Below are positions 5,012-54,866 of a stretch of DNA of 64,000 nucleotides, piece after piece; position 1 is the first letter of the stretch, and each line of letters starts with the position of its first letter. The stretch lies in IMG/VR virus record IMGVR_UViG_3300026484_000007, positions 62,001 to 126,000 of that record. One strand, given 5' to 3'. The position numbers and the translations under genes were made by a program. The notes beneath the pieces are model-generated. The model did no database searches, was not told where the DNA came from, and was given only the letters and a program-made list of their open reading frames with translations.

Positions 5012-5053
5012 TATAATACAATTATAATAATTTATAATAATTTTAAGATTTAT

Positions 5054-5080
5054 AAAAAGGATCTTTTTTAGATCCTTTTA
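5054..5080 (+). terminator. Hairpin AAAAGGATC-N7-GATCCTTTT after the 1669-aa ORF
   Basis: Inverted repeat with T-tail, intergenic; built on the GATC-N7-GATC motif. Confidence 0.45.
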
Positions 5081-18165: not shown

Positions 18166-18175
18166 TAATTTTCCT

Positions 18176-21418: not shown

Positions 21419-22807
21419 TCACTCCTTTCTTTCTAAATTTTCTAAAGCTTTTTTTCTGAGAATACAACTACCACATTCACCACATGGTTCTCCATTTTTA
21501 GGATAATAACATGAGAATGATAAATTAAGAATTTCATAAAATTTATTTTTACCAAATTCTTTTACGAATTCTTTGATCATATTTGTCTTCGTTCTATTGA
21601 TATATGGAGCTTTCATCCCAAACCCCGTGAAGAATTTTCCACCATGATTTAATACATTTTCCATATTATCCATCCAAGCAGAATTATTATCACCGAAAAC
21701 TTGTCCTTCTGATAAATTTAATCCGAAGACAATTAATCCTAAACTTACTCCATCTTTTTCTGCGATAGATTTAATTATTTCTGCAAAAATAGAATTTCTA
21801 AAAGGAATATAACTTAAATTTTCTTCAGTTTCTCTTTCATCACCTTTTGATGATTTATCCGTAAGTTTTAAGTTAGTATCTAAAATAGATGCTAATCCAT
21901 TAATTATATTTTTTACATCAATAATTCTGAAAGAATATTGATAATCTGGAAAGTCTTTTTTTACTAATTCAATAAACTTTTCAGTAGCAGCAATTTCTTC
22001 TTGAGTACTATTATTACCATAATCAAAATAAATAAAATTAATTTTGATTGCATCTTCATTGAAAATCAACGAAATGTGTTTTTCGATTTCATCAATTACT
22101 TTATAAGCACTTAATGAAATATCCATTCCACCACTAAAACTTATATAAATATTTTTATATACGTCTGATGGCCTATCGCAATGAGCTTCTGTTTTTATAA
22201 ATACACCATCCTTAAAATTAAATTGTGGATCCATGCTATAAATTTTTAAATTTTCGTGTTCATGTTTCCAAAGACCCATTCCTTTATTGACGATATTGTA
22301 TTCGTCGAAATCTGGGAAAATCTCAAGATATGTATATAATCCTTTAATGAAATTTTCTGGTAAATCAGAATGAAACATTATTGCTTCAGTATCAACTGTT
22401 AATTCTTTATTTAATTTTTTTTCAACTTCTTTATCATTCGAAATTGTTCCATGAACCCAATACCAATCATGTTCATTGATAAATGGAGGCATTGTTTCTA
22501 ATCCAGATTTTTCCATTTCAGGTTTCTGTCTAGAAAATAATACTAAGTGACATTTTTGAAATAAAAAAAGCGATTGTTTTTTTAATTCTTCAAAAATTTT
22601 ATCAAAAAAATCATTGTACGTATCTTCAAAAGATTCGCCTTTGCTGATTATAGATTTATAACTACTATACGGATTTCCTAACCACAATAATGTGAAAGAA
22701 TAACCATCTCCACCTTTTTTATTCAATTCATATTCTAATAATTTTTTATTAGATAATAAATCCATTATATTCTTAATTTGATCATTGCTGTAAAGTATTT
22801 GACACAT
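21419..22807 (-). CDS. queC: Gat-QueC: Ntn glutamine amidotransferase domain fused to 7-cyano-7-deazaguanine synthase
   Basis: N-terminal M-C, HGTISN and VDTE in the GATase-II part; SFSGGMD PP-loop, YIPFRN, SCY..PCGECGSC..R. Confidence 0.88.
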   Translation of the reverse strand: MCQILYSNDQIKNIMDLLSNKKLLEYELNKKGGDGYSFTLLWLGNPYSSYKSIISKGESFEDTYNDFFDKIFEELKKQSLFLFQKCHLVLFSRQKPEMEKSGLETMPPFINEHDWYWVHGTISNDKEVEKKLNKELTVDTEAIMFHSDLPENFIKGLYTYLEIFPDFDEYNIVNKGMGLWKHEHENLKIYSMDPQFNFKDGVFIKTEAHCDRPSDVYKNIYISFSGGMDISLSAYKVIDEIEKHISLIFNEDAIKINFIYFDYGNNSTQEEIAATEKFIELVKKDFPDYQYSFRIIDVKNIINGLASILDTNLKLTDKSSKGDERETEENLSYIPFRNSIFAEIIKSIAEKDGVSLGLIVFGLNLSEGQVFGDNNSAWMDNMENVLNHGGKFFTGFGMKAPYINRTKTNMIKEFVKEFGKNKFYEILNLSFSCYYPKNGEPCGECGSCILRKKALENLERKE

Positions 22808-22880: not shown

Positions 22881-24809
22881 TTAGATCTCTTTTTGCTCTT
22901 CTTCAATTTCTTCATTTTCTTCATCAGATAAAATGAATAAACCTCTTGCATGAATACTTAATGAATCATATGCTCCAGTTTTAAAAACTGAATTTTTAAA
23001 ATTTACTGCATAAATTTTTTCACCAGTATTTATTTCTTTTACTTCTTTTACATGAATTCCTCTATGTTTTCTTGCAGTCGCAAGAATTCCATGAGTTTCA
23101 AGATATTTTTTATCTTCTTCCAAAAGCTTTTCTAATCTTTCAGATTGTAATCTTAATTTTAAAGTATTAGGTTCTCTTTTAGATACAACATGATAGTATC
23201 TGAAATCTTCATCAATAACCATAGCTCTTAGACCAGTATCTTTTCCTCCAAAATCAGCATCTCCATTTAAATTAAAAACTCTAGAATTTTCATCCCCGTA
23301 ATTATATGGAAGCCAATCTACGTTTCTATGTCCATGAATTTGAAATTGATTTTCTTTAGTATGTTTTTCCCAAGTTTTTTTGATAACTTGCTCATCTCCA
23401 TATTTACCAATTCCTCTGATAATTTCTTCAGTTTTTAAAAAGATTTTTGGCGGCTGAATAATTCCTCCATGAGTAAATAAAATTTCTTTTCCTTTGAAAT
23501 CTATCCAAGCCATTTGAGCTAATTTAGAATAAAAATCTTTAATTGCTTTTAATTCTTTATCTTTATAATTTTCATAGATAAAATAAAAGGTTTTTCTTGT
23601 TTGTATTGAAATTAACCTTCTTAATTCTTTATCATAGTATTCTTCGATCTTTAAAAGATTAAATTTTATTCTTTCTAGTTTTTTAAGATTTTCATTGTAA
23701 GATCTAACATCTCTATAAATTTGAATAATTGAATCAAATATATCTGGATCAGATTCTTTGATTACATCTAAATTAAAATATTTTTGAAGTTTGTCTTTAG
23801 ACCAATCTTTTTTTAAATTAAAAAGAACGTTTTTAATTACTGACAGATCTTTTGGATCTGCAAAAGAACTTAAATGTTTTTCTTCGAAAAGTTCTTTATT
23901 TACCTCGAATCTTTTTTCGATCTCTTTTAACTTTTCATTAATTGATTTGATTATAGATTTATAATCATCAATTTTAGATTTAGCATCAATGTACTCATTG
24001 AAATATGTAAATCCTAATTCATGATTTCCTTGTAATAGCATTACATTTTCGTATTGAAAAATTTCCATAAAGAAATCAATTGTCTTCTTAAGATTTTCTT
24101 CGTCTGGAGCTCTATCAAAATAGTCTCCTAAAAATATCCAAAAATAATTAGGATCTTTTATAGATTCAATATTTTCTTCTTTTTTAATTTTATTAATTAA
24201 CTCTTCTAATTCATCGTAACAACCATGAACATCTCCGATAGCAATTACTTTTTGATATTGATTAAAATCAAATGATTTTTCTTTAGATTCTTTCCATTTA
24301 GAAAATTCATCCGGTTTAATTACTTCAACCCAACTTGGAATGTTTTGAGTTCTTTGTCTTTCAAAAATATTTTTAATTGCTTCTTCTGGAACATATTTAT
24401 GTGGTTCAAAAGATTCTAATCTTGATTTATTTCTTTTTAAAATTTCTTCTAAAGAAAGATCTCTGAAGTCAACTAAAGTTACTCTGTATCTGTATTTTTT
24501 AGCTAACTGTCTATATCTATTAATTAATTTAGAAGAACTATGAGTAGCATCGATTACCGTAAAATCTCCTCTCTTCATTCTTTCTTCTAAAAACGCAAAA
24601 ACAAGTTCCCAAACCCTTTTATCGTTTTTTGAGGAAATTGTTTTTATTAGAGAGTCTGGTTGAGAAACCGGACTCTCCATTTTAAGTCTAATATCATCTG
24701 GTTCAATAGCAAATGGTCTAAGACCATTTTTATTAATCCAAGTACTTTTGCCTGATCCAGGCGCCCCACATGTTAAAATTAAATTTCTCATTTTTCTCCT
24801 TTTTTCCAA
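22881..24809 (-). CDS. Polynucleotide kinase (AAA_33)-metallophosphoesterase with truncated RNA-ligase-like start
   Basis: GAPGSGKST, VIDATH; GDVHG, GDYFDR, GNHE, THGG, HGH; C-terminal NF..VF..ARGLF. Probable start 24791. Confidence 0.85.
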   Translation of the reverse strand: MEKRRKMRNLILTCGAPGSGKSTWINKNGLRPFAIEPDDIRLKMESPVSQPDSLIKTISSKNDKRVWELVFAFLEERMKRGDFTVIDATHSSSKLINRYRQLAKKYRYRVTLVDFRDLSLEEILKRNKSRLESFEPHKYVPEEAIKNIFERQRTQNIPSWVEVIKPDEFSKWKESKEKSFDFNQYQKVIAIGDVHGCYDELEELINKIKKEENIESIKDPNYFWIFLGDYFDRAPDEENLKKTIDFFMEIFQYENVMLLQGNHELGFTYFNEYIDAKSKIDDYKSIIKSINEKLKEIEKRFEVNKELFEEKHLSSFADPKDLSVIKNVLFNLKKDWSKDKLQKYFNLDVIKESDPDIFDSIIQIYRDVRSYNENLKKLERIKFNLLKIEEYYDKELRRLISIQTRKTFYFIYENYKDKELKAIKDFYSKLAQMAWIDFKGKEILFTHGGIIQPPKIFLKTEEIIRGIGKYGDEQVIKKTWEKHTKENQFQIHGHRNVDWLPYNYGDENSRVFNLNGDADFGGKDTGLRAMVIDEDFRYYHVVSKREPNTLKLRLQSERLEKLLEEDKKYLETHGILATARKHRGIHVKEVKEINTGEKIYAVNFKNSVFKTGAYDSLSIHARGLFILSDEENEEIEEEQKEI

Positions 24810-25288: not shown

Positions 25289-27022
25289 TTAATTTTTAAT
25301 TTTTAATTTTTTAATTTTTTTAATTAATCCATCTTTAATTTTTTTTAAAGATAATGTTAGATTCTTGAGTAATTTTCTGTACTCGATATATACAAAGGAT
25401 TCATTTGCTATTGTTTTCATATATGATGTAGACTGTCTATCTGCATCATAACTACGACAAACGTATCTTAACGGAACCCTTTCTTCAAGCCTTATTTGTA
25501 CAATATCCTCTAAATTTTCTGAACTTCCACCAAACGATCTAATTTCGATCGGTTCCCCAACTCTTTCTCTTAAAAATCTTAAGATAGCTCTATTTTTTAA
25601 ATACGGTGAACATAACGAAAGAATTTTTTCATCGTAAGCCATATCATACTCTGGAGTTAATACCACTTTAGTATTTTTTAAAAACATTTTAATTAAAGGA
25701 ATATTAATAGCTTTATCATTCTGAACATTAAAATAATTCAGACGATTAAAAAAGTTTAAATTTGAATATATAGCGTTGTAAAATCTATTAACATTCGAAT
25801 CTGCAAGCACTTGTAAAACATTAAATGAAAATGGTTCTCCAGTTTCTTTATCTTTTAAATTTTCGGTCGTCTCATAATACGAAATCGAAATAAAATCAAG
25901 ATAGAATCCTTCAAAGAATCTATTTGGATTTAATAATGTTTTATGAGGAGAGTTTGATGTTTTATTATTAGAATGTTTTAAGATATATTCTAAAAATTCT
26001 TCTTTAATTCTAAGAAAAAATTTAAAATTTGATCCCTTATAACCATAACTTATTAAATCATAAAAATGATTTATTTTATTAGCGAAACTCTTTTTTCTGA
26101 AACTTATTTGATATGAGTTTGAGTTATTCGGGTCATTAGAATCGTTAGCTTTTTTTAAACGCAAATACCACGATTGTTTTATATCAAAAAATTTATATAA
26201 ATATTCTTTTTTAAAAAAGACTTCAAATATTTTTCCAGAATCAAGAACTTCTCTAATTTCTTTATCGTTAAATTTATATGGATACGTTTCGATCGTATAA
26301 TTTTCTGTTATAGCATCAGCATTTTTATATGGAACACGTTTAAAAAAATTTATATCATTTTCATCAACTCCATTAACTAAATTGCTAAAATCTATAATTT
26401 TTGAAATCTTTTTAAATTTATCTTCATAATATTTAAGAATAAAATCATAATCATCTTGAGGAACTATTGGAGCATTCATTGCATCTTCCATTTTTTTCTT
26501 AAAATCATTTTCTAAGAAATCATAAATTACTTTAAATAAATTCACTAATTTAGGGATTGAACGAATCGAATGTTTGTGTTTTGTATATCCATCTTCGTCT
26601 AAAATCTCAAATAAAACATTTGAATCTTTATTATCTATCTGCGTTACATATTCTGAAATAGATAAAGTAGTATTATTTACCGTTAATAATAAATGATATT
26701 TTATGCAAAAAATATCAGGAATATCTCCATTAATAATTTCATCTTTGAAATTATTGATATATCTTTTCATTTTTTCCCAAAACTCAACATATTCTTGTGG
26801 AAATGCATTTGCTGTTTTAAAAACTTGAAGTCGAGTATCGACTTTGTAATTTAATAATTCAAAATGATATTCGCTATATTTTTTTATATAAACCCCAATA
26901 TAATCTTCAGACCAAGAACTAGCTTTTCTTATTATAAAATAATCTTCTGGTATTCCTAATGAAGTAATTTCCTCATTTAATTTATCAATAAGTGTTTCTA
27001 TAGTGTAGTTTTTGTATAACAT
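25289..27022 (-). CDS. Hypothetical protein
   Basis: 577 aa, AAGGAG RBS. Confidence 0.7.
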   Translation of the reverse strand: MLYKNYTIETLIDKLNEEITSLGIPEDYFIIRKASSWSEDYIGVYIKKYSEYHFELLNYKVDTRLQVFKTANAFPQEYVEFWEKMKRYINNFKDEIINGDIPDIFCIKYHLLLTVNNTTLSISEYVTQIDNKDSNVLFEILDEDGYTKHKHSIRSIPKLVNLFKVIYDFLENDFKKKMEDAMNAPIVPQDDYDFILKYYEDKFKKISKIIDFSNLVNGVDENDINFFKRVPYKNADAITENYTIETYPYKFNDKEIREVLDSGKIFEVFFKKEYLYKFFDIKQSWYLRLKKANDSNDPNNSNSYQISFRKKSFANKINHFYDLISYGYKGSNFKFFLRIKEEFLEYILKHSNNKTSNSPHKTLLNPNRFFEGFYLDFISISYYETTENLKDKETGEPFSFNVLQVLADSNVNRFYNAIYSNLNFFNRLNYFNVQNDKAINIPLIKMFLKNTKVVLTPEYDMAYDEKILSLCSPYLKNRAILRFLRERVGEPIEIRSFGGSSENLEDIVQIRLEERVPLRYVCRSYDADRQSTSYMKTIANESFVYIEYRKLLKNLTLSLKKIKDGLIKKIKKLKIKN

Positions 27023-36190: not shown

Positions 36191-36471
36191 TCTTTATCCT
36201 TTAAAAATGATTGTAATCTTTTTAATCTATTTTTCTTTTTAATTAATTTTTCATAAATATTATTAATTAAAGGAATATTTTGAGCTTCTTTTTCAAATAC
36301 CTCCTTATAAAAATTTTTTTGTAAAAGATCAATGTCAATTTTTATATTCTCAATGAGATCTTTTAAAGATACATTATGAAGTTTTAAGTATTCATCTATT
36401 GTAATTCCATATATATCATCTGTGTTTTGGATTGATATGTCCGGCGTTTTAATTAAATCATCTTTTATCAT
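36187..36471 (-). CDS. Hypothetical protein
   Basis: Translationally coupled 94-aa ORF. Confidence 0.55.
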   Translation of the reverse strand: MIKDDLIKTPDISIQNTDDIYGITIDEYLKLHNVSLKDLIENIKIDIDLLQKNFYKEVFEKEAQNIPLINNIYEKLIKKKNRLKRLQSFLKDKE

Positions 36472-36989
36472 TTTATCTCCTTTTTTAAAAACTCACTTGA
36501 ACCTAAAATTAATTTTTTTAATAAATTAACTGGATCAATATCTTTAGCTTCTATATATTTTAACTTATCAAATTCTTTTTCTAAAAAAGATAAATTAAAA
36601 TCATCCACAATTAATCCATATTCAATTTTATTATTTTTCATAAAATTTCTTATGGCTTTTTCTCTATTATTGATTTCGTCAATGTAATTAATATTCAATT
36701 TTTTTACTATTTCAAATAATTCTTTAATTTCATCTTCGATCGAATCTTTTATAGATTCTTTTAAGTACAACTTGTTGTTTTTTAATTCAAGAATACAAGA
36801 CCAAGAACTTGTAAGATAAATCTCAAAGCCTAAAAGATCACAGAATCTATTAAGAATTTCTACGTTTTGAGAAGTTTCTTTTTTTATAGATTCTAAATCA
36901 TATCCATACGATTTTCTATAATTTCCCCAAGGAATAATACAATCATCTAGATCCAAAAAAAGGATCTTTTTTAGATCTTTTTTAATCAT
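36468..36989 (-). CDS. HAD-superfamily (HAD_SAK-like) phosphatase
   Basis: LFLDLDDCI, LTSSW, LIVDD motifs. Confidence 0.72.
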   Translation of the reverse strand: MIKKDLKKILFLDLDDCIIPWGNYRKSYGYDLESIKKETSQNVEILNRFCDLLGFEIYLTSSWSCILELKNNKLYLKESIKDSIEDEIKELFEIVKKLNINYIDEINNREKAIRNFMKNNKIEYGLIVDDFNLSFLEKEFDKLKYIEAKDIDPVNLLKKLILGSSEFLKKEIK

Positions 36990-43289: not shown

Positions 43290-44438
43290 TTAATTAAGAT
43301 AAATTATTTTTAATTTATCTTTTATTTTTTTAATCTCATCAATTATATATTGATGATACGTAAATACGACTACCATTACATTTTCATCTCCAAAATTAAT
43401 AATATTACTTAATTCATAAGATACATCTTCTGAAGTCTTATGACTTACAGTATTGATAATTTTTGGTGGATTTCTAAATAAAGATTCTAAAGTATTTTTT
43501 AATTCAAGTATCATTTGATACTTAGGAGAATTCTTTAATGCTACTTTTCCACTTACATTATTTTTATATTCTCCTCCTATAAATACCACTTTGCCTTTAT
43601 TGTCAGTTTTATCTAAGAATTCGAAGATTGTTTTTTTCAAATCATTTAAAATAATTTGATAATAATCTTCATTGATATTATCTGCAGCTTTCCACAGACT
43701 CTCTACTGGACCTGATAAATACTTATTATCTACTCCTATGCATTCTCCACCGATCAATCCTGGATGGATCCCTTTGACAAAATTGTCTTTTAATTCACAA
43801 ATTCTAATAGTCTCTTCAAATACTTTTTGATTAAATATTTGCATTTTAAATGAATTCATTAGCGAAATTAAAATATACCTTTGAGTGTTTTCAAAGATTT
43901 TGGCTAAAATTACTGCTTCTGGAAAATCAGAATATTCAGCTCCAAATATCTTTTCAATATAATTTTTTAAATCGGCAGTACTCCAGTAAGTTAATTTAAA
44001 ATTAACATTGTCTCCAGGCGAGTATCTTTCTGGGACTACTGCTTTACTTTTAGATTTTATACCATAAAAAAATGATACATCGAATGTTGATCTTACTACG
44101 ATCGGATTATTTGAAAAATATTTATTAATTAATCCTGCAAAAAGAAGATCTTCTTCTTTATTTCCTTTGGTGTTTATGCAAATATAAATTTTTGCTTTTT
44201 CATCAATTCTTTTAGAAACTTCTTTCATGAATTCTTTTTCACCCCAATGGATAATAAATGCATCACCTATTTTATTCAATTCTTTTAAATTCTCAGGCGT
44301 TTTGATATCCAGAAAAAGAATTTTATTTTCTGGAAAAGTTTTTTTGATATCTTGAGCTGTTTTTAATCCTATTAAACCAGCTCCAATTATAATTTCATTA
44401 TAATTTTCATTCAATTTACAAATTTCTTGAATTAGCAT
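43290..44438 (-). CDS. Divergent UDP-glucose/GDP-mannose-family nucleotide-sugar dehydrogenase
   Basis: IGAGLIG, VVRST, PERYSPG, AKIFENT.R, PGLIGGECI (catalytic Cys). Confidence 0.72.
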   Translation of the reverse strand: MLIQEICKLNENYNEIIIGAGLIGLKTAQDIKKTFPENKILFLDIKTPENLKELNKIGDAFIIHWGEKEFMKEVSKRIDEKAKIYICINTKGNKEEDLLFAGLINKYFSNNPIVVRSTFDVSFFYGIKSKSKAVVPERYSPGDNVNFKLTYWSTADLKNYIEKIFGAEYSDFPEAVILAKIFENTQRYILISLMNSFKMQIFNQKVFEETIRICELKDNFVKGIHPGLIGGECIGVDNKYLSGPVESLWKAADNINEDYYQIILNDLKKTIFEFLDKTDNKGKVVFIGGEYKNNVSGKVALKNSPKYQMILELKNTLESLFRNPPKIINTVSHKTSEDVSYELSNIINFGDENVMVVVFTYHQYIIDEIKKIKDKLKIIYLN

Positions 44439-44456: not shown

Positions 44457-45512
44457 TTAATAATTTGCAGTTTTGCAATAATGAAATGGAATATGTTCAA
44501 ATGTTATATTCTTAGCCATTCTGAAAAAATATGCATCAATGTTTATAGCTGGGACTTTATACTTATTTTTTATTTTTAATAAAATATGCAAAGTCGCAAA
44601 TCTTAATAAGAATTCTTCATTTGAATTTTCAATTAAGAGTTCTTTATTTTTAATTTTTTTAAGAATTTTTTTGAATCTCTTAGTTTCTGGAAATAAGTTA
44701 TAGAAATTCATTGCTTGTGGAAGTCTGTAATCGATAGGAATTTTATTATAATTTTTAACAATTTCCGCGAGACGCTCCACATCTATCTTATTAATAATTC
44801 TATATTTTTTTATATAATAATTGAAAAAATATGCTCCAAGAATCTTCTTTTTTTCAAAGAAATCTTGAGTAAAGATAGGGTTATCAAAATTAACTCCGTA
44901 CTTTAATAAAGATTCCAAAATATTAATTCTTTCTTGCAACATTGGATATTGCTTTTCAGTCATTAATAATATTAAAGAATTTATAACTTTCTTATAAAAG
45001 TTTATATAATTTTTTAAACGAAATTCGTATTTGTCTTTATCAGATAATTCTAAATAATAAAAAATATAATTTCTAATTTCTTTTTTAAAGATCTTATCTA
45101 GATCTTTAGAATAAACCCAAGAATCAATATTACCTTTATAATTTGGCGTCCACCAGAACCCAAATTGCAAAGCACTATTAATAACAGAATATCCATAAAT
45201 TAATTCGCTAAAATCAAAACACATATTGTTTCTTTTTTTTACTTCGATGCTCGTTGAAGTTGGAATACAGTATTCTCTTTTATTGATCCAAGAAAGATCA
45301 GGAAATAAAGGTTTTGCTTTTTTTAATCTATCTTTTAAATCAGGCATTCCTTTATAGAATTTTTTTAATTTTTTATCGATTTGATTTTTTTCTTTATCCG
45401 TTAAAATATTTTTTAATTCTTTATACATTTTTTCTCCTTGCGTATATTTTATATATTTAAAAAGAGATCCTAAAAAGATCTCTTTTCTCTTTCTTTTTTC
45501 TGCTCTCTCCAT
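44457..45512 (-). CDS. Qng1/DUF2419-like queuosine-nucleotide N-glycosylase (salvage) homologue
   Basis: ALQFGFW, P.LQER, FEKK, IDYRLPQ, EE..LR.AT, AINID..F, PFH...T.NY C-terminus; probable start 45428. Confidence 0.65.
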   Translation of the reverse strand: MERAEKRKRKEIFLGSLFKYIKYTQGEKMYKELKNILTDKEKNQIDKKLKKFYKGMPDLKDRLKKAKPLFPDLSWINKREYCIPTSTSIEVKKRNNMCFDFSELIYGYSVINSALQFGFWWTPNYKGNIDSWVYSKDLDKIFKKEIRNYIFYYLELSDKDKYEFRLKNYINFYKKVINSLILLMTEKQYPMLQERINILESLLKYGVNFDNPIFTQDFFEKKKILGAYFFNYYIKKYRIINKIDVERLAEIVKNYNKIPIDYRLPQAMNFYNLFPETKRFKKILKKIKNKELLIENSNEEFLLRFATLHILLKIKNKYKVPAINIDAYFFRMAKNITFEHIPFHYCKTANY

Positions 45513-45943
45513 TTTTCGTCAATTACATCTAATACTTCTGGAACATTATCATGATATTTTTTATGACAATATTCGCAAAGTACGATATAATTTACTTTTT
45601 TATCAAAATGCATATCCATAATTTCTTGACAAACATCAAAATCAGTTTTATCGTCTAAAGTATTCATATTGACATGCATTTGAAGATAATCATCTACGAC
45701 ATCAAATAAAGTTTTTGGATAATGATGAGATTCCATTTTAACGACATCTCTACTTATCCCACAAATTGGGCATTCATCAATTCCAATTTTGCTTCGTTTC
45801 TGCCAAATATCATATGACATTGATCCTCTAATTAATTTTTGAAGATGTTTAATACAACGAATATATTGTCTATCATTGCTTAAGTCATAATTATACCATA
45901 TCGAGGTATTTTCATTTTCTTCTTTGAATCGACTATCAGCCAT
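45470..45943 (-). CDS. HNH-like zinc-binding protein
   Basis: CPICG..ESHH..LCEYCHKKYH. Confidence 0.6.
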   Translation of the reverse strand: MADSRFKEENENTSIWYNYDLSNDRQYIRCIKHLQKLIRGSMSYDIWQKRSKIGIDECPICGISRDVVKMESHHYPKTLFDVVDDYLQMHVNMNTLDDKTDFDVCQEIMDMHFDKKVNYIVLCEYCHKKYHDNVPEVLDVIDEKWREQKKEREKRSF

Positions 45944-45996: not shown

Positions 45997-47211
45997 TTAT
46001 TCGTCTTTGACTAACAATTCAGTTTTTGTCTTAGAGAATTTTGAGTTCTCAATTATTTTATCAAAATACTTTTCGCTAAATCCACTCAATTCTTTAATTT
46101 CTGATCCAAAATTCATTGCTAGTTTTTTTATCGTATCCGACGAATTTTCCCAAGCATGAATATGGATACTTTTTCTTTTCTTAAATTTTTCCATTGAAGG
46201 TTTTAGATCTTCAATGTTTTTATCAAATCTTCTTTTAGATCCAGCTAAAGTAATTCTTACTAATTTTGGAGTCTTTTCTTTTGAATGATTTTGATTATTT
46301 GAATCATTTTCATTAGTATTTTTCTTCGGATCTTTTTTAGATCTTTTTTTGTCTTTTTCTAAAAATATAAAAAATTTTTCTTTTAAATTTTTTATTCTCT
46401 CTGGCTTTAAACATATTTTTAAAAGCGCATCATTAGAATTTGAAATTTTTAATAATTGCTTTCTCGTTAATTTTGGTAATCTAATTTTAAAATGATATTC
46501 TTCTTCTAAATCTTCAAAAGATAGATTCCAAACATTATCTTCACCAATTTCATTGATAATTGTATCTAAATTATTATAAAATTTTTCAGGAACCGTTTTA
46601 TGTTTTTTTAAACGATCGATAGTTGATTTTGAAAGATTAAATAATAAACTCGCATCTTTTATAGATACATTAGGATACTTTTTTAAAAATAAAAAAGCTT
46701 TTAATCTTAAACTGAAAGATTTTGCTGAAAGTTTTGATTTATAAATTTTTTCATGAATATCTAATACCCAAATTAGATCTTCTTTATTAACGATCTTTTT
46801 AAGATCATTAAGTACTTCATCTGTAATAATTTTATCTTCTTCAAATTTTTTAAAATTTTTATCGATTAATTCTTTTTCAATTTCTTTAGCTAAATCATTT
46901 AAAAAATTTTCATATTTTTTAAGATCAATCCCATTATGATCAAGAATGAATTTATAAATTTTTGGATATTCATTTTTGATTTTATCGTATAATAAATAAC
47001 CTATTTTATATTTTCCATCCATCTTATTTTGAATTCTTGGGAATGTCATTCTTGAAATATTATAATCGTATTCTTCTTTAAAACTTTTAGATAATTTATA
47101 TCCTGATGACTCAGGATTTTTTTCAATAAATTCAATTGCCTTTAAAAGCCAAACCCAAGGTATTCCTGAATGTCTAATTCTAACGTCTGATGCATTTACT
47201 TCTTTTCCCAT
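45997..47211 (-). CDS. Basic protein with HTH-like segment(s)
   Basis: SIKDASLLFNLSKSTIDRLK. Confidence 0.5.
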   Translation of the reverse strand: MGKEVNASDVRIRHSGIPWVWLLKAIEFIEKNPESSGYKLSKSFKEEYDYNISRMTFPRIQNKMDGKYKIGYLLYDKIKNEYPKIYKFILDHNGIDLKKYENFLNDLAKEIEKELIDKNFKKFEEDKIITDEVLNDLKKIVNKEDLIWVLDIHEKIYKSKLSAKSFSLRLKAFLFLKKYPNVSIKDASLLFNLSKSTIDRLKKHKTVPEKFYNNLDTIINEIGEDNVWNLSFEDLEEEYHFKIRLPKLTRKQLLKISNSNDALLKICLKPERIKNLKEKFFIFLEKDKKRSKKDPKKNTNENDSNNQNHSKEKTPKLVRITLAGSKRRFDKNIEDLKPSMEKFKKRKSIHIHAWENSSDTIKKLAMNFGSEIKELSGFSEKYFDKIIENSKFSKTKTELLVKDE

Positions 47212-47238: not shown

Positions 47239-48108
47239 TTATTGATTTATAAGTCTTTTAAAATTTTTATTAATCTCCGATCTTAAACGTTGATAGTCCC
47301 AAAAGTTTAGAACGGTATATTTAATAAATTTATTTTCATCGTAATCTTCAAGATAATCGTTTTGAATGATACTGAATTCTTTTGATATAAAAAAATCGAA
47401 TTTAAAATCTTGAACATAGTATCTTTTAACCGAATTTTTATCAATGAATAAATGAACCATTTGATTCTTTTTTTCATCTATAAAAGAATCGATTATAGTT
47501 AATTCTAATTCATTAATAATTTCTTCATTTAACTCAGTTAAAAATGGATTAATCTTGTTTGTATCTTTTTTAGATCCTTTTGCTAAAGAATTAATTTTTT
47601 TATTTAAATCATCTTGTATGATTTTATTGATTTTTTCATTTAAGTTTTTCTGTTCCTTTTTATCAATTTTCGAAGCCTTAAATTTTTTAATTTCTTGACC
47701 GACTCTATTTGCAACTAACTCTCTCGTTCTAATATCGATGAATTGCTCTTGTTCTTTTTTAGCAACTTCTTCTAATTCTTTAATTTTATTTAATTCTTGA
47801 TAAAAATTAAAAAAGTCGCTTCTTATATCGTATTTTTTTATATCATTTTCGATAATTATCATTTTTAAATAATTTAAAAATAATAAAGGATTTTTTTCAA
47901 TTTCCTGATTGAATAATAAATTATATTTTGATAAAAATTGAACAATTTTCGGTCTTCTCCATAATGCTTCAAATAAATAAATAATATTCCTTTTGACCTC
48001 TTTTTCTGACGACAAAAAAACGTCAGGAATAGATTCCTGACGTGATGTAATATAATCAATTAAATCTCTTACCGTAACTTTAGCTTTCGAAGATTTATTT
48101 TTGGCCAT
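47239..48108 (-). CDS. Hypothetical protein
   Basis: GGAG RBS; contains an internal terminator-like motif. Confidence 0.65.
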   Translation of the reverse strand: MAKNKSSKAKVTVRDLIDYITSRQESIPDVFLSSEKEVKRNIIYLFEALWRRPKIVQFLSKYNLLFNQEIEKNPLLFLNYLKMIIIENDIKKYDIRSDFFNFYQELNKIKELEEVAKKEQEQFIDIRTRELVANRVGQEIKKFKASKIDKKEQKNLNEKINKIIQDDLNKKINSLAKGSKKDTNKINPFLTELNEEIINELELTIIDSFIDEKKNQMVHLFIDKNSVKRYYVQDFKFDFFISKEFSIIQNDYLEDYDENKFIKYTVLNFWDYQRLRSEINKNFKRLINQ

Positions 48109-48814
48109 TTTCTACTCCTGAATTTCCAAATAATTTTTCAAGAGTTTTTTGGTTTAAAGTATAAACATGAATTCCTGTTACAAAAACTTTTACTGCATCA
48201 AATAAATAATCATGTGTTTTAACTTTATTGATTTCAGCAATTGTTTCAGTAATTAATTCTCTGTATTTTTCTGGTTTGATAAAATTATCAATTAGAATTT
48301 TTATTAATATTGGAGAGAAAGTTTCTGATAAAGCATTCGCAATCATATTTACGAATTGATCAAAATCAATTTCTTTCCATTCATTGTGTTTATCGTTTGT
48401 ATCTTTTTTAGATTCGTGTTCTTTATTGAAGTCAATATACACTCTTCTAATAGTTGAATAAGATAATCCTTTTGGTTCAAATTCTTCTCTTAATTCTTTT
48501 AATGTTTTTTCTGGATTTTTTTCTAAATATTTTAATAAGTCTCTTTTTAAAAGTTGACTCATTTTTCTATTAGCTTTTTTTCTTACCTCTTTTTTCTCTT
48601 GAATTTCTTTTTCATGAGAGCGTTTTTCATCCAAAATCTCATTTACAATATCTTGATATTTTTTATATTTTAAATCTCTAATTCTAGTAACAGTCGAAAC
48701 GCTTGTTTCGTAATAATTAGCTAAATCTTTTAAAGTCATAGGTATTTCTTTATTCTTAATTTTATTAGCCGCAACCCAAATATCATAAATATGTTGATCA
48801 GATAATCTTGTCAT
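48095..48814 (-). CDS. Tandem HTH DNA-binding protein
   Basis: TLKDLANYYETSVSTVTRI and TLKELREEF..LSYSTIRRV. Confidence 0.6.
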   Translation of the reverse strand: MTRLSDQHIYDIWVAANKIKNKEIPMTLKDLANYYETSVSTVTRIRDLKYKKYQDIVNEILDEKRSHEKEIQEKKEVRKKANRKMSQLLKRDLLKYLEKNPEKTLKELREEFEPKGLSYSTIRRVYIDFNKEHESKKDTNDKHNEWKEIDFDQFVNMIANALSETFSPILIKILIDNFIKPEKYRELITETIAEINKVKTHDYLFDAVKVFVTGIHVYTLNQKTLEKLFGNSGVENGQK

Positions 48815-48836: not shown

Positions 48837-50075
48837 TTAATATGTTTTTAGAATGTTTTTACATTTAGATTCAAGAATTTCTGTCGAATCTTTTTCGTTT
48901 AAATAAATATCTAAAAATTCTTGAATAATCTGTAGATTATTATAAATCTCAACTGCAAATCTTCCTTGTTCAAATAAAGGATGGATCTTTTTAAGATCAT
49001 CAATTGAATAATCAAAATATTTTCTTAGATCTTCTAATGATAAATTATCTAACAATTCGTGACTAAATTGAATTACATTATTAATATTTTGACACATAAA
49101 ATCTACAAAATCTTCATTTTCTAATTTTCCATGATTGCATAATAAATCTTTTTTTTCTTTAATTGTATCTAAAAAAGATTCTTTATTAGAATGATTATCT
49201 AACATCTTATCAAGATCGTTTATATCTTTAATGAATAAATAATCATCTTGATGTTTGCATACTAATGGTAGTTTATGTTCAATTTTGGCAAATCTTATCA
49301 ATTCACTTGAATCCATAGTAAATTCGATATTAATATCGTATTTACTTAAAAGATTTTCTAAGAAAATCGTTGTGAATATCATAAGTTTACTACTTTGACC
49401 TAATAAATGAAGATGAGTAATTTTTCCATTATTATCTCTAATTTTGCTTAATAGCCAAAATAAAAATGGAACAGCATGACTAAATTTCGCATTAGTCTCT
49501 TTTTTTAATCCTACTAGACCTCCAAAAGAATATCTAGTATAGTATTGATATATATTATGCTTATCCATAAGCTCTTTCCATAAATCAAAGACTGGTTCAA
49601 TTCTCGTTTGGACAATAAAAAGTTGCTTATCAGCAATTTCTGGAATTTCTTTAATCAATTGAATACTTTGACTAATACTGTAATCATTGAATTCAATTTG
49701 CTCTTGTTTATTCCAACCACGATTCATAACGTCCAATGAGAATATGTAATCTATATCATCTTTGTATTTTTTTAGTAAATAATGATATGTTCTGATGTAT
49801 TCTTTAACTCTACGTTTAGAAACATATCCCATAATAACCTGGAACCCTCCCGAATCCACGAATAATTTTATTTTATCTGCGACTTCAGGATAAATCTCTT
49901 TATATTTATTTTTCTGCTTAACGATTTTCTTCATTTGCTTATCGATTTGAAATAAAGTCCAAGATTTATTAGTAGTTGGCTCTGCCATTGATACTAAGAA
50001 ATTTGGAAAATATTTAAACGTAACCTTCGTTATTCTTTCTGGAGCTGCTGCTCCAAGTACTGCTACATATTTCAT
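48837..50075 (-). CDS. DpdA/TGT-like guanine transglycosylase
   Basis: FVDSGGFQ, SLDV, FGGLVG, HLHLLG, TMDSS motifs of the TGT/DpdA TIM barrel. Confidence 0.8.
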   Translation of the reverse strand: MKYVAVLGAAAPERITKVTFKYFPNFLVSMAEPTTNKSWTLFQIDKQMKKIVKQKNKYKEIYPEVADKIKLFVDSGGFQVIMGYVSKRRVKEYIRTYHYLLKKYKDDIDYIFSLDVMNRGWNKQEQIEFNDYSISQSIQLIKEIPEIADKQLFIVQTRIEPVFDLWKELMDKHNIYQYYTRYSFGGLVGLKKETNAKFSHAVPFLFWLLSKIRDNNGKITHLHLLGQSSKLMIFTTIFLENLLSKYDINIEFTMDSSELIRFAKIEHKLPLVCKHQDDYLFIKDINDLDKMLDNHSNKESFLDTIKEKKDLLCNHGKLENEDFVDFMCQNINNVIQFSHELLDNLSLEDLRKYFDYSIDDLKKIHPLFEQGRFAVEIYNNLQIIQEFLDIYLNEKDSTEILESKCKNILKTY

Positions 50076-50079
50076 AAAT

Positions 50080-51645
50080 TTACCTCCATTCGTAAACTAA
50101 ATTTCCACTATCATATATCCTTCGATAACCAGCTTCGATCATAATTAATTCTGCTGTTTTGGAAGAATCATAATTGGGGAATTTTTTCAATTTATGTTTT
50201 TGAAACTTAACTCTATGATAGAGTTTTAATTCTGGATCACTCATTTTAAAATAATAAAAATTAGGTTGAGTAGTTCTTAGATATCTAAATCCAATACTTT
50301 TATAAAGATTATTTAAGCTACTAGCCCATCTACGATTAGCATATGAAATTACTGATTTAGGTTGGAATTTTTTCAGAAAATATTTAAACAATCTCTGAGC
50401 GCATCCAACGCATGCAGTAAATTTTTTTGAAGCGAATCTAATGAGCTCGTACTCATAATTTTTATTAAACCTTGGCTTAGCAAAAGCCATACAAGAGATT
50501 AACTCTTGATCATGATATAAGCCTAAATTTATTTTCGACGAACATGATCCTTGCAAATGATTTTCATTAAAAAAATCATTTGTTTTTTTGGACGTTATTT
50601 CTTTAATTTCTAACTTTCTTGCAAAGTATTTTTCTTTAATAACTCCAAGCTTATAAGAGATTACTGATTTCCAAATCTCTTTAATTCTTGGGTTAATCCA
50701 TTCATTTTCAAATATATGCAAAAGATTAATGTTTTTACTTTCGCAAGCTTCAGTCTTCTTTAGATGACGATCTTTATCAGCTTCCAAAGAATGCCAAAAG
50801 AGACCATTGTATTCTATTGCTAGATTTTTCTTTGGAATTAAAATATCTAATTCTTTTGGTTTTATGGTTTTTCTATCGTTTTCTATTATTTTTCCATCGT
50901 AAATTTCTTTAATATAATTTACGATTTCCTTTTCCGTTTGCGAATAATTTGCATTTTTTACGTAATTGATATTTAATCTTTTTAAAGTATTGTGGGCAGC
51001 AACTTGCCCACAATTGAAATAATCCATAAATTCTTTCAATTTAAAATGTTTATTTTCATCTAAAAAATTTTCTATTATAAAATTTGAATCATTATATTTA
51101 TCTAGATTATTTATTTTGCCTGTACTTGAGGATATATAATTGTATTTTTTTAAGCAAGTTTTTTTTGCTTTTTCTTTTATTTCTGGTAATTGCGCAGTGC
51201 TTCGAACTCCGTATTTTTTAATATTCGTCTCAATCAATTTTGATTTTGATTGTTCTGACATTGATGGAACTGGAACTCCATATTTTTCCATTGAAGTTTT
51301 TATAATTTTATTTTTCTTTTCAATGTTTTTATTTGAACAATTCGTGGAGCAAAATTGCCCATAAGAACCACCACTTCGCCATCTTAATTCTTTAGAACAT
51401 TCTTTACATACTGGTATATAATTTATTTTATTTTTTATATGCCAGATAATCTGCTTACCAGTAAAGCCAGAAACTTCAATTTTAAAATGATTATTTTTTA
51501 AAAATTTATTTAAATTAATTATAGTTAATTTTTTAGCATTATCTATATAATTTTTAAAAATATCTGAAGTTTCATATAATTTAATTAAATCATCCAAAAT
51601 AGGAAGCGTTGTAAGCGTACCATTCATTTGATTTTCCTTCTTCAA
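50080..51645 (-). CDS. Hef-like homing endonuclease (KYGV repeats, PD-(D/E)xK/Vsr-like nuclease, C-terminal accessory domain)
   Basis: CKEC..FCS..C, KYGV repeats, ELDI.IP..NLAIEYNG.FWH, ELIRFA..ISYA.RRW, IYDSG. Confidence 0.75.
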   Translation of the reverse strand: MKKENQMNGTLTTLPILDDLIKLYETSDIFKNYIDNAKKLTIINLNKFLKNNHFKIEVSGFTGKQIIWHIKNKINYIPVCKECSKELRWRSGGSYGQFCSTNCSNKNIEKKNKIIKTSMEKYGVPVPSMSEQSKSKLIETNIKKYGVRSTAQLPEIKEKAKKTCLKKYNYISSSTGKINNLDKYNDSNFIIENFLDENKHFKLKEFMDYFNCGQVAAHNTLKRLNINYVKNANYSQTEKEIVNYIKEIYDGKIIENDRKTIKPKELDILIPKKNLAIEYNGLFWHSLEADKDRHLKKTEACESKNINLLHIFENEWINPRIKEIWKSVISYKLGVIKEKYFARKLEIKEITSKKTNDFFNENHLQGSCSSKINLGLYHDQELISCMAFAKPRFNKNYEYELIRFASKKFTACVGCAQRLFKYFLKKFQPKSVISYANRRWASSLNNLYKSIGFRYLRTTQPNFYYFKMSDPELKLYHRVKFQKHKLKKFPNYDSSKTAELIMIEAGYRRIYDSGNLVYEWR

Positions 51646-54374: not shown

Positions 54375-54866
54375 TTATAGATCCCACGGAAATAACAACC
54401 AACCTTTTGGTTTTTTTTCTGCGTAATAATCTACTAAGTCTCCTTTATTTCTTCCTTTATACATAACTGCTGTATAAATTTCAACATCTGCGAATTCATT
54501 ATTTGCGTCTAAAATTGCTTTAATTGTTTCGCCAGTATCAGTCAAATCATCGACTAATAAAATTTTTTTGCCATCAAATTTTTTTAATTGATGCCTGATA
54601 TGATTTATAATATCATCGGTTACTTCTTTAGGCTCAGCATCATCTTCATAAAGAGTTACATCTATTAAATCAGTTTCTCTAATATTAAGATAATAACTTA
54701 AATATCCTCCTGGAACAATTCCTCCTCTATTTATCATCACTATTTTATCAAATTTTTTATCTTCATGACATACATCAGATTGTATTTCTTCTGCCAATTT
54801 TTTACATGCGTTTTGAACATCTTCTGGCGTAATTAATACTTTTCCATCATCCAATTTTAGCATCAT
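54375..54866 (-). CDS. Type I purine phosphoribosyltransferase (Gpt-like)
   Basis: INRGG, LLVDDLTDTGET PRPP loop, WLLFPW C-terminus. Confidence 0.88.
   Translation of the reverse strand: MMLKLDDGKVLITPEDVQNACKKLAEEIQSDVCHEDKKFDKIVMINRGGIVPGGYLSYYLNIRETDLIDVTLYEDDAEPKEVTDDIINHIRHQLKKFDGKKILLVDDLTDTGETIKAILDANNEFADVEIYTAVMYKGRNKGDLVDYYAEKKPKGWLLFPWDL

What the first reader, a model, noticed from the sequence alone, without database searches (positions are those of the whole stretch)
44457..45512. Phage homologue of the queuosine-salvage glycosylase Qng1 (DUF2419)
Seen: ordered motifs F.FW, DYRLPQ, E..LR, ID..F and terminal PFH...T..Y match my recollection of DUF2419. Established: Qng1 releases queuine from queuosine 5'-monophosphate. 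It is not among the phage dpd genes I know of. Inference: it harvests 7-deazaguanine bases from host tRNA breakdown or from modified dNMPs to feed DpdA or to clean the nucleotide pool.
Basis: partly seen in the sequence, partly recalled or inferred. Interest (0 to 1): 0.68.

Follow-up and report, generated by a model that had tools for sequence, protein, structure and literature searches.

The report
Phage Qng1-like deazaguanine nucleotide glycosidase
A giant phage from hydrothermal vents carries a diverged copy of the enzyme that cells use to cut the queuine base off its nucleotide; it sits among the phage's genes for putting 7-deazaguanine into DNA, so it probably belongs to that pathway, where no such step has been described.

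Summary
The ORF is real. It lies on the minus strand at 44457-45512, and the likely start is 45428 (AAGGAG 6 nt upstream), giving 323 aa. It is a true homologue of Qng1/DUF2419: Pfam Q_salvage 30.3 bits (cut-off 25), a 25-sequence profile against Qng1 crystal structures E 7e-19 over nearly the full length, and an AF2 model (pLDDT 86.5) against 7uk3 at Z 18.8.

The catalytic Asp-Tyr, the HhH Lys, the base-reading Asp and the C-terminal His...Tyr-COOH tail are all kept. The queuine-specific pocket (W48, H53, Y93, W94, W299) and the D69-N72-D207 proton relay are not kept (S85, Q88, F201, A299). It is therefore a new subfamily, not a queuosine-salvage orthologue.

Context:
- A DpdA/TGT-like gene lies 3.4 kb upstream in a block conserved in three related phage contigs.
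- An XGPRT-like phosphoribosyltransferase and a Gat-QueC are also in the window.
- FolE, QueD and a QueE-like gene are elsewhere in the 272.6-kb genome.
- Other metagenomic phage contigs carry FolE-QueD-PRTase-QueC-Qng1-like operons.

Best reading (inferred): it frees a preQ0/G+-type base from its 5'-mononucleotide for DpdA. I found no homologue in deposited phage genomes and no mention in the phage 7-deazaguanine papers I could search.

The parts
44457..45428 (-). Qng1/DUF2419-like N-glycosidase gene, 323 aa (P0002). The longest ORF runs up to 45512 (351 aa, P0001).
   Evidence: ORF. RBS AAGGAG before the ATG at 45428. Pfam Q_salvage 30.3 bits. Profile against PDB Qng1 E 7e-19. AF2 pLDDT 86.5 with VIA Z 18.8 to 7uk3.
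45460..45486 (.). Palindromic hairpin (10-bp stem) between the 157-aa gene and the Qng1-like start, overlapping the upstream stop codon. It could be a weak terminator or attenuator.
   Evidence: Sequence. The terminator-like scan reports it on the + strand; it reads the same on the minus strand because it is a palindrome. Function not tested.
45470..45943 (-). Conserved 157-aa protein of unknown function, always immediately upstream of the Qng1-like gene in this phage lineage.
   Evidence: 76-78% identical in L017, L019 and L002 and adjacent in all of them. phrog_12252 (unknown function) E 5e-16; weak HNH phrog_8048. No Pfam or PDB hit.
45997..47211 (-). Variable 404-aa ORF inside the block.
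   Evidence: Only 27% identity to L017 and absent from L002. Weak sub-threshold Inositol_P match.
47239..48108 (-). Conserved 289-aa protein of unknown function in the block.
   Evidence: 40-61% identical in L017, L002 and L019. No Pfam or PHROG hit.
48095..48814 (-). 239-aa protein with weak HTH-like matches.
   Evidence: Sub-threshold HTH Pfam hits. Partial homologues in L017 and L002.
48837..50075 (-). DpdA/TGT-like transglycosylase, 412 aa (P0027).
   Evidence: phrog_887, the family of the phage PSTCR4 DpdA, E 1.2e-7 and 2.4e-6. Atlas: viral clusters 0.97, a TGT-bearing cluster 0.94, a PF23859 DpdA cluster 0.90, and TM 0.62 to archaeal TGT models. Motifs FVDSGGFQ, FGGLVG and FTMDSS. 61-77% identical in L017 and L002. 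Not hit by PF01702 or PF23859, but PF01702 also misses known phage DpdAs.
54375..54866 (-). XGPRT-like 6-oxopurine phosphoribosyltransferase, 163 aa.
   Evidence: phrog_8995, the same family as the PRTase of Cellulophaga phage phiST. PDB: purine PRTase GpT-2 E 2e-14 and E. coli xanthine-guanine PRTase E 5e-10. Homologues sit in the FolE-QueD-PRTase-QueC-Qng1-like operons of L030 and L040.
21419..22807 (-). Probable Gat-QueC, an amidotransferase-QueC fusion of the preQ0/archaeosine-base synthase type, 462 aa.
   Evidence: Pfam QueC E 4e-25 on residues 248-457. tblastn aligns residues 32-454 or 115-456 to phage Gat-QueC / 'archaeosine synthase' genes. phrog_1550.
43290..44438 (-). UDP-glucose/GDP-mannose-dehydrogenase-like protein, 382 aa, directly downstream. 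Any link to the pathway is unknown.
   Evidence: Pfam UDPG_MGDP_dh central domain 27.7 bits. 69% identical in L017.

Best explanation
The gene encodes a phage-specific, diverged member of the Qng1/DUF2419 family of helix-hairpin-helix mononucleotide N-glycosidases. Shown: it has the Qng1 fold. It keeps the catalytic Asp-Tyr (D233-Y234), the HhH Lys (K193), the Asp that reads the guanine-like edge (D298), an aromatic/aliphatic base sandwich (F302, L197), basic residues at the phosphate site (R235, K306), and the C-terminal H316...T320...Y323-COOH tail. In Qng1 that tail puts the terminal carboxylate on the ribose 3'-OH, which restricts the enzyme to free nucleotides. It has lost the queuine cyclopentenediol pocket and the D69-N72-D207 relay. 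Inferred: it hydrolyses the N-glycosidic bond of a 7-deazaguanine nucleoside 5'-monophosphate bearing a small 7-substituent (preQ0, archaeosine-base, ADG or CDG type; ribo or deoxyribo) and releases the free base. That base is the substrate of the DpdA-like transglycosylase encoded 3.4 kb upstream, which would swap it into phage DNA. A plausible source of such nucleotides is the co-encoded XGPRT-like PRTase or the host's own enzyme. The PRTase would usefully recycle the guanine expelled by DpdA into GMP, then GTP for FolE, but would also mis-ribosylate the deazaguanine base. The glycosidase would then return that base to the pool. Breakdown of modified nucleic acid is another possible source.
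For: Homology and fold: Pfam Q_salvage above its cut-off; 20 of 25 clade members hit PF10343; profile against 7uk3/7u07 E 7e-19 and against human 7ugk E 2e-18; Foldseek's top 11 hits are all Qng1; VIA Z 18.8 and 17.3, with the next hit AGOG at 12.7. Active-site map from the HMM alignment and the residue roles in PMC9881137; conservation across 25 sequences. Context: DpdA-like gene in the same conserved block; Gat-QueC in the window; FolE, QueD and a QueE-like gene in the genome; XGPRT-like PRTase. Relatives lie directly after queC in L020 and L024 (33% identical to each other). Compact FolE-QueD-PRTase-QueC-Qng1-like arrays occur in L030 and L040. 11 of 80 metagenome loci have a preQ0-pathway gene within 10 kb.
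Against: No substrate or activity has been shown; the specificity argument rests on residue substitutions read from an alignment and a predicted model. The DpdA assignment is remote (E about 1e-6 to 1e-7; no PF01702 or PF23859 hit), and a tRNA target cannot be excluded. A PRTase and a nucleotide glycosidase catalyse opposite reactions, so their pairing could mean something other than rescue. The 11-of-80 figure has no background control, and many loci come from one vent sample series. In L026 and L025 the relatives lie among replication or glycosyltransferase genes with no que genes in the flanks. The protein is only 33-38% identical between phages whose neighbouring genes are 61-78% identical, so its role may be less constrained or may differ between phages.
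Confidence: 0.5

Rival explanations
1. It is a true Qng1 orthologue. It hydrolyses queuosine 5'-monophosphate from host tRNA turnover to give queuine, for Q modification of tRNA (host tRNAs or the phage's own tRNA-Asn) or as a crude deazaguanine source.
For: Same family, fold and catalytic residues. The phage encodes a tRNA-Asn(GUU), which is a Q-type tRNA.
Against: The pocket for the cyclopentenediol (W48, H53, Y93, W94, W299) and the relay that draws its proton from Q's secondary amine (D69, N72, D207) are replaced: S85, Q88, F201, A299. N72 is Q in 22 of 25 clade members and D69 is A or S in 20 of 25. PMC9881137 calls these residues conserved or strictly conserved. The gene neighbours are preQ0 and DNA-modification genes, not tRNA genes.
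Confidence: 0.12
2. It belongs to a productive nucleotide-level branch. Together with the XGPRT-like PRTase it makes or exchanges deazaguanine mononucleotides. For example, through the retaining Asp intermediate it could swap guanine for preQ0 on (d)GMP, or release a base that was matured while ribosylated. Modified nucleotides would then exist upstream of, or instead of, DpdA exchange.
For: The PRTase sits inside the FolE-QueD-PRTase-QueC-Qng1-like operons and in the window's block. Qng1 chemistry is proposed to retain configuration, possibly through a covalent Asp intermediate, which is what a transglycosylase needs. phiST, whose G is fully replaced, has the same PRTase family (PMC10516641).
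Against: This is pure inference. Qng1 is known only as a hydrolase. A DpdA-like gene is present, so no DpdA-independent route is needed. phiST has the PRTase but no Qng1-like gene was seen in it.
Confidence: 0.1
3. It is a guanine-nucleotide hydrolase. It cleaves GMP or dGMP, lowering the canonical G pool or supplying guanine or ribose phosphate during infection.
For: D298, which reads the guanine-like edge, is kept, and the 7-substituent pocket is rebuilt. A MazG-like pyrophosphatase lies near FolE and QueD in the genome.
Against: Qng1 enzymes do not cleave GMP. Like Qng1, this protein shows no residue aligned to the N7-anchoring position of Ogg1. Destroying GMP would starve FolE of GTP.
Confidence: 0.1
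4. It is a DNA (or RNA) glycosylase that excises a base from a polymer, like its AGOG/Ogg relatives, for example in repair or in attacking modified DNA.
For: HhH glycosylase fold; AGOG is the next-best structural match (Z 12.7). One clade member hits Pfam AGOG.
Against: The Qng1-specific C-terminal tail ending in Tyr-COOH, with H316, T320 and E272 (St E267), is conserved in 23-24 of 25 sequences. In Qng1 that tail occupies the ribose 3'-OH side and, with the hairpin insertions, blocks the DNA cleft. The model aligns to Qng1 along its whole length (1-323 against 12-323), far better than to the DNA glycosylases.
Confidence: 0.05

Closest known systems
Qng1 / QNG1 (DUF2419, C9orf64; Pfam PF10343 Q_salvage): Sphaerobacter thermophilus Qng1 (7uk3, 7u91) and human QNG1 (7ugk)
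   Same: Two-lobe HhH fold with the family's insertions and C-terminal tail. Catalytic D231-Y232, K199, D298, E267, R271, H316, T320 and the terminal Y323 are all matched, at almost the same residue numbers. Basic residues sit at the 5'-phosphate site (R235 for K233, K306 for Q306).
   Different: About 14% identity. The queuine pocket residues and the D69-N72-D207 relay are replaced, with the signature [AS]xLQ[FY]xFW in place of DxxNxxFW. It is encoded by a phage next to DNA-modification genes, whereas Qng1 is cellular. The substrate is unknown.
AGOG / Ogg-type 8-oxoguanine DNA glycosylases (1xqo, 3knt, 3n0u)
   Same: Same HhH superfamily and the same Asp/Lys chemistry; Z 8-12.7.
   Different: They lack the C-terminal Tyr-carboxylate tail and the cleft-blocking insertions that this protein shares with Qng1. 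They act on DNA.
Phage and bacterial 7-deazaguanine DNA modification systems (FolE, QueD, QueE, QueC or Gat-QueC, DpdA1-4, DpdL/M/N; Hutinet 2019, Cui 2023)
   Same: This genome has FolE, QueD, a QueE-like gene, Gat-QueC and a DpdA-like transglycosylase.
   Different: No nucleotide N-glycosidase or purine PRTase is part of the described phage pathways. The two papers do not contain 'DUF2419', and 'glycosylase' or 'phosphoribosyl' are absent from them. The pathway is described as base-level synthesis followed by post-replicative exchange.
Deazapurine nucleoside antibiotic pathways (toyocamycin ToyH, tubercidin TubE PRTases); cited from my own knowledge, not checked here
   Same: preQ0/CDG synthesis genes clustered with a PRTase that ribosylates the deazapurine base.
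   Different: Those clusters have no Qng1-like hydrolase and make secreted nucleosides rather than DNA modifications.

Membership tests
Q_salvage / DUF2419 superfamily (Pfam PF10343) | Significant match to the family HMM | tested here: met
   30.3 bits against a cut-off of 25, E 4e-7, C-terminal 90 residues. The clade profile matches Qng1 chains end to end at E 7e-19.
Q_salvage / DUF2419 superfamily (Pfam PF10343) | Qng1 fold: HhH two-lobe core plus family insertions and a C-terminal tail | tested here: met
   AF2 pLDDT 86.5, pTM 0.88. 7uk3 Z 18.8, rmsd 3.3 A over 253 aa, model 1-323 against chain 12-323; human QNG1 Z 17.3.
Q_salvage / DUF2419 superfamily (Pfam PF10343) | Catalytic HhH Asp (D231) and Lys (K199), and ribose-stacking F75 and Y232 | tested here: met
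   D233, K193, F91 and Y234 align. D, K and Y are invariant in 25 of 25 sequences and F in 24 of 25.
Q_salvage / DUF2419 superfamily (Pfam PF10343) | Terminal Tyr whose carboxylate completes the active site, anchored by E267 and H316 | tested here: met
   The protein ends ...PFHYCKTANY-stop. E272, H316 and Y323 align and are kept in 23-24 of 25 sequences.
Qng1 orthologue (queuosine-5'-monophosphate hydrolase) | Cyclopentenediol specificity pocket: W48, H53, Y93, W94, W299, P46 | tested here: not met
   W299 becomes A299 (small residues across the clade). Y93 and W94 become W104 and V105 and vary. No counterpart of W48 or H53 appears in the alignment.
Qng1 orthologue (queuosine-5'-monophosphate hydrolase) | Strictly conserved proton relay D69-N72-D207 fed by Q's secondary amine | tested here: not met
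   S85, Q88 and F201. Across the clade N72 is Q in 22 of 25, D69 is A or S in 20 of 25, and the D207 position is hydrophobic or small.
Qng1 orthologue (queuosine-5'-monophosphate hydrolase) | Hydrolysis of Q-5'-MP to queuine | not testable with these tools
   Needs an enzyme assay.
Phage 7-deazaguanine DNA modification module (dpd/que genes) | Encoded with a DpdA-type transglycosylase and preQ0 synthesis genes | tested here: met
   The DpdA-like gene 48837-50075 lies in the same conserved block. Gat-QueC, FolE, QueD and a QueE-like gene are in the genome. Relatives are adjacent to queC.
Phage 7-deazaguanine DNA modification module (dpd/que genes) | Needed for, or changing, the level or type of DNA modification | not testable with these tools
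   Needs genetics and LC-MS of DNA.
HhH DNA glycosylases (AGOG/Ogg/EndoIII) | Open DNA-binding cleft with no C-terminal plug | tested here: not met
   The Qng1-type tail is conserved, and the model aligns better and further with Qng1 than with AGOG (Z 18.8 against 12.7).

The most novel reading that the evidence does not exclude
Phage 7-deazaguanine DNA modification includes a so far unrecognised nucleotide-level limb. An XGPRT-like PRTase and a Qng1-derived enzyme would interconvert deazaguanine bases and mononucleotides. The Qng1-like protein might even act as a (d)NMP base-exchange enzyme through its retaining Asp intermediate. Modified nucleotides, and not only free bases for DpdA, would then be pathway intermediates, possibly feeding replicative incorporation.
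Probability: 0.1. Interest if true: 0.85.

Novelty: new variant of a known kind. Interest (0 to 1): 0.62.

Why it matters
Phage 7-deazaguanine DNA modification protects phage genomes from restriction. It is currently described as synthesis of the free base (FolE, QueD, QueE, QueC and variants) followed by post-replicative exchange by DpdA.

A conserved phage subfamily of the Qng1 nucleotide glycosidase has lost its queuine-specific residues. It is repeatedly placed next to queC, a 6-oxopurine PRTase and a DpdA-like gene. This points to additional steps that move deazaguanines between base and nucleotide forms: salvage, proofreading or supply.

That gives a directly testable candidate enzyme. 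It offers a possible explanation for how base supply and guanine removal are balanced. It also widens the known substrate range of the Qng1 fold. The family appears only in uncultivated phages, many of them from hydrothermal-vent samples, so it would have been missed by surveys of deposited phage genomes.

Tried and rejected
- Single-sequence searches: none found anything for P0001 (PHROGs; PDB by phmmer).
- Deposited phage genomes: tblastn of INPHARED with P0001, P0011 and P0009 found nothing.
- Viral predicted structures: BFVD gave no match at E <= 0.001.
- First AF2 run: with 4 sequences the model was unusable (pLDDT 51.5). It was repeated with 25 sequences.
- IMG/VR scan with the close clade: nothing found. 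With the wider alignment, 5 loci were found.
- 'No DpdA in this genome': I first thought this from PF01702, even at E 10, from PF20314/DpdA4, and from phmmer with the phiST DpdA3 (the best hit was a 42-residue chance stretch in ORF 25289-27022, and Atlas shows nothing there). I rejected it. PF01702 also misses DpdA in the positive controls phiST and PSTCR4, and phrog_887 then found the DpdA-like ORF. phrog_7068, phrog_19058 and PF23859 gave nothing. The A4 profile against PDB gave nothing.
It was redone with A5.
- Whole-record searches of the metagenome loci: not possible.
- Promoter scan: uninformative in this AT-rich DNA.
- No RNA runs hold the locus, so expression was not examined. Read laying and complex prediction were not used, and no binding claim is made.
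Full report
OBSERVATION

Window 44457..45512 holds one open frame, on the minus strand (351 aa, P0001).

The first ATG would overlap the upstream gene by 43 nt. The second ATG, at 45428, is preceded by AAGGAG at the right spacing and is the start used by the database gene call (P0002, 323 aa). I take the gene to be 44457..45428 (-). A 10-bp palindromic hairpin (45460-45486) lies between the two genes.

WHAT GENOME THIS IS

The window is bases 62001-126000 of a 272.6-kb viral record (IMG/VR, CheckV 97% complete) with about 26% G+C.
- It has split RNA polymerase beta-type genes, topoisomerase II subunits, a split family-B DNA polymerase and SMC-like ATPases, so it is a jumbo phage.
- Near-identical DNA occurs in runs from three studies. 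The two holders that carry an organism label are hydrothermal-vent metagenomes.

FAMILY AND FOLD

- Pfam Q_salvage (PF10343) matches above its gathering score (30.3 against 25 bits), but only over the last 90 residues.
- The word-index search found four relatives. The exhaustive representative search with their profile found only 23 proteins at E <= 1e-3 among 1.84 billion. Of the 25 aligned sequences (A3), 20 hit PF10343 on their own.
- The A3 profile matches the Qng1 crystal structures over nearly the whole length: 7uk3/7u07 from S. thermophilus at E 7e-19, and human QNG1 7ugk at E 2e-18.
- AlphaFold2 with four sequences failed (pLDDT 51.5). With A3 it gave pLDDT 86.5 and pTM 0.88.
- Foldseek's first eleven PDB hits are all Qng1 entries.
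- VIA-align gives Z 18.8 (rmsd 3.3 A, 253 residues, model 1-323 on chain 12-323) for 7uk3 and Z 17.3 for human QNG1. The next hit is the archaeal 8-oxoG glycosylase AGOG at Z 12.7.
- The ESM Atlas look-up agrees (feature score 0.93 to Q_salvage clusters).

ACTIVE SITE

The roles of StQng1 residues are taken from PMC9881137. The alignment is and the conservation counts. In the numbering of the 323-aa protein:

Kept:
- D233-Y234 for D231-Y232 (nucleophile and ribose stack; 25 of 25).
- K193 for K199 (25 of 25).
- F91 and W92 for F75 and W76.
- L197 for I203 (base sandwich).
- D298 for D298 (reads the guanine-like edge; 24 of 25).
- F302 for W302.
- S269, E272 and R276 for S264, E267 and R271.
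- H316, T320 and the terminal Y323 for the same numbers in StQng1.
- At the phosphate site, R235 for K233 and K306 for Q306.

Not kept:
- D69 becomes S85 (A or S in 20 of 25).
- N72 becomes Q88 (Q in 22 of 25).
- D207 becomes F201.
- W299 becomes A299.
- Y93 and W94 become W104 and V105 and vary.
- No counterpart of W48 or H53.

In Qng1 the lost residues form the cyclopentenediol pocket and the proton relay that starts at queuosine's secondary amine. So the chemistry of a mononucleotide N-glycosidase is retained. This includes the C-terminal carboxylate, which in Qng1 contacts the ribose 3'-OH and argues against a polymer substrate. The parts that make Qng1 a queuosine enzyme are gone. On these grounds I file it in the Q_salvage superfamily but not as a Qng1 orthologue.

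CONTEXT IN THE WINDOW AND GENOME

- The window holds a probable Gat-QueC at 21419-22807. Pfam QueC matches the C-terminal half, and tblastn aligns residues 32-454 to phage Gat-QueC/'archaeosine synthase' genes.
- Elsewhere the genome has FolE (G000 179189-179980), QueD (182263-182859), a QueE-like radical-SAM gene (158063-158911) and a MazG-like gene (180319-180780).

I first found no DpdA: PF01702 gave nothing even at E 10, and neither did DUF6610/DpdA4 or the phiST DpdA3. A control showed that PF01702 also misses DpdA in phiST and in Providencia phage PSTCR4, so that negative result means nothing.

The PHROG family of the PSTCR4 DpdA (phrog_887) does hit the genome, at window ORF 48837-50075 (E 1.2e-7 on the genome, 2.4e-6 on the protein).
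- The Atlas places this ORF next to viral clusters (0.97), a cluster carrying TGT (0.94) and a PF23859 DpdA cluster (0.90). Its Atlas model aligns to archaeal tRNA-guanine transglycosylase models at TM 0.62.
- Its sequence has FVDSGGFQ, FGGLVG and FTMDSS. From my own knowledge these are the TGT motifs that carry the invariant aspartates and the Gly-rich loop listed for DpdA and TGT in PMC10164549. I did not align it residue by residue to a solved DpdA.
- The structural Zn motif CXCX2C...H is not evident.

I call it DpdA-like with moderate confidence.

It lies 3.4 kb upstream of the Qng1-like gene on the same strand. Comparison with three related metagenomic contigs (L017, L002, L019) shows a conserved block:
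- PRTase 54375-54866 (71% and 34% identical).
- DpdA-like gene (77% and 61%).
- 239-aa ORF.
- 289-aa ORF (61%, 53% and 40%).
- A variable ORF.
- 157-aa ORF (76-78%).
- Qng1-like gene (33-38%).
- UDPG-dehydrogenase-like ORF (69% in L017).

The 521-aa DUF7487/REase-like ORF (50080-51645) is present only in the window.

The PRTase is of the 6-oxopurine type. It matches purine PRTase GpT-2 at E 2e-14 and E. coli xanthine-guanine PRTase at E 5e-10. It belongs to the same PHROG as the PRTase of Cellulophaga phage phiST.

RELATIVES ELSEWHERE

- P0011 lies directly after a queC fragment on L020.
- In L024 (= L044) queC (562-1344) is followed by the Qng1-like ORF. These two Qng1-like proteins are only 33% identical, so the adjacency is seen in divergent lineages.
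- P0009 (L021, L022) has a PRTase 3 kb upstream.
- A 255-kb IMG/VR phage (L025) has both a Qng1-like gene and a DpdA-like gene (A4 profile E 1.4e-9), 40 kb apart.
- A metagenome scan with the short clade (A5) returned 80 loci. With a handful of single-sequence queries at E < 1e-5, 11 of them (36 are 5 kb or longer) have FolE, QueC, QueD or QueE within the flanks.
- L040 reads FolE 709-1455, QueD 1464-2054, PRTase 2058-2501, two small ORFs, QueC 3405-4190 and Qng1-like 4255-5076. L030 has the same genes, in the same order and on the same strand, within 10 kb.
- Not all loci show this. L026 sits in a replication module and L025 among glycosyltransferases.
- There is no background control for the 11-of-80 figure, and many loci come from one vent sample series, so I treat the association as suggestive. 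The compact operons are the strongest single item.

MECHANISM

Shown:
- The fold and the catalytic and nucleotide-binding residues.
- Loss of the queuine-specific residues.
- Genomic association with the preQ0/G+ synthesis genes, a 6-oxopurine PRTase and a DpdA-like gene.

Inferred:
- The enzyme cleaves a 7-deazaguanine nucleoside 5'-monophosphate with a small 7-substituent and releases the base.
- DpdA uses that base.

My preferred picture runs as follows. DpdA expels one guanine per exchange. The PRTase turns guanine into GMP, which removes the product and regenerates GTP for FolE. A guanine PRTase, phage or host, is also likely to ribosylate preQ0-type bases. The Qng1-like enzyme would return them to the base pool, and would equally recover bases from degraded modified nucleic acid.

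I give this about 0.5. The rivals are:
- True Q-5'-MP salvage, 0.12. The phage does encode a tRNA-Asn(GUU), but the specificity residues are missing.
- A productive nucleotide-level route or base exchange, 0.1.
- A GMP or dGMP hydrolase, 0.1.
- A DNA glycosylase, 0.05.

NOVELTY

- The two main papers on phage 7-deazaguanine pathways do not contain 'DUF2419'. 'Glycosylase' is absent from one, and 'salvage', 'hydrolase' and 'phosphoribosyl' from the other.
- Full-text searches for Qng1 with phage, for 'queuosine salvage protein' with phage, and for PF10343 found nothing relevant. The 2024 MMBR review is not held, so I cannot exclude a mention there.
- No homologue was found in 50,697 deposited phage records with three queries, nor among BFVD viral structures.
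- The Atlas does list a Q_salvage cluster whose commonest assigned phylum is Uroviricota, so automatic annotation already labels some of these proteins.

I rate it a new variant of a known kind: a phage subfamily of Qng1 with changed specificity determinants and a new pathway context.

LIMITS

- No activity, expression or DNA-modification data.
- The DpdA assignment is remote.
- Residue inferences come from an HMM alignment and a predicted model whose coordinates I could not inspect.
- The neighbourhood statistics are uncontrolled.

Noticed in passing
window 44457-45428 compared with 45470-45943 and 48837-50075; L017, L002, L019: The Qng1-like protein is only 33-38% identical between phages whose flanking genes are 61-78% identical. 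It therefore evolves much faster than its neighbours. This could reflect relaxed constraint, changing substrates or an arms race.
   Followed up: partly
window 50080-51645 (-): A 521-aa ORF with DUF7487 and a weak REase_MTES_1575 match is inserted between two conserved genes. It is absent at that place in L017 and L002. It looks like a mobile or homing-endonuclease-type insertion next to the DpdA-like gene.
   Followed up: no
G000 258000-272600 (outside the window; loci L006-L010, L012, L013): The genome gives nine radical-SAM matches, eight of them clustered at its right end. That is an unusual density for a phage. I did not annotate them.
   Followed up: no
G000 132709-133767 (outside the window): A second protein (352 aa) is hit by the PSTCR4 Gat-QueC at E 3e-14, better than the window's own Gat-QueC. 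It may be a separate amidotransferase or QueC-like gene.
   Followed up: no
G000 17865-18313 (outside the window): There is a cluster of five tRNA genes (Arg-TCG, Ser-GGA, Asn-GTT, Thr-GGT, Gln-TTG). tRNA-Asn(GUU) is a queuosine-type tRNA.
   Followed up: partly
method: PF01702 on L016 (phiST) and L023 (PSTCR4): The Pfam TGT model, as run through the genome search, finds no DpdA in two phages known to encode one. A blank with PF01702 therefore cannot be used to claim that a phage lacks DpdA. phrog_887 worked for the DpdA1 type.
   Followed up: yes
window 22881-24809 (-) and 36468-36989 (-): An AAA_33 kinase plus Metallophos phosphoesterase fusion (polynucleotide-kinase/phosphatase-like) lies beside Gat-QueC, and there is a HAD_SAK_2 'Swiss Army Knife RNA repair' HAD domain protein. 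These are RNA-repair-type functions.
   Followed up: no
window 16056-17156 (-) and 17170-18165 (-): The family-B DNA polymerase appears split into two adjacent ORFs. One carries the exonuclease domain (Pfam DNA_pol_B_exo1) and the other the polymerase part (phrog_262, phrog_1918).
   Followed up: no
window 45460-45486: A perfect 10-bp palindromic hairpin overlaps the stop of the 157-aa gene just upstream of the Qng1-like RBS. It might modulate read-through into the Qng1-like gene.
   Followed up: no
L016 (Cellulophaga phage phiST) 28218-28646 and 45600-49705: phiST, whose G is fully replaced by 7-deazaguanine, carries the same small purine-PRTase family (phrog_8995) as this phage, plus a MazG-like gene inside its DpdA3-FolE-QueE-QueD cluster. 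The PRTase may be a general, unremarked companion of phage deazaguanine systems.
   Followed up: partly
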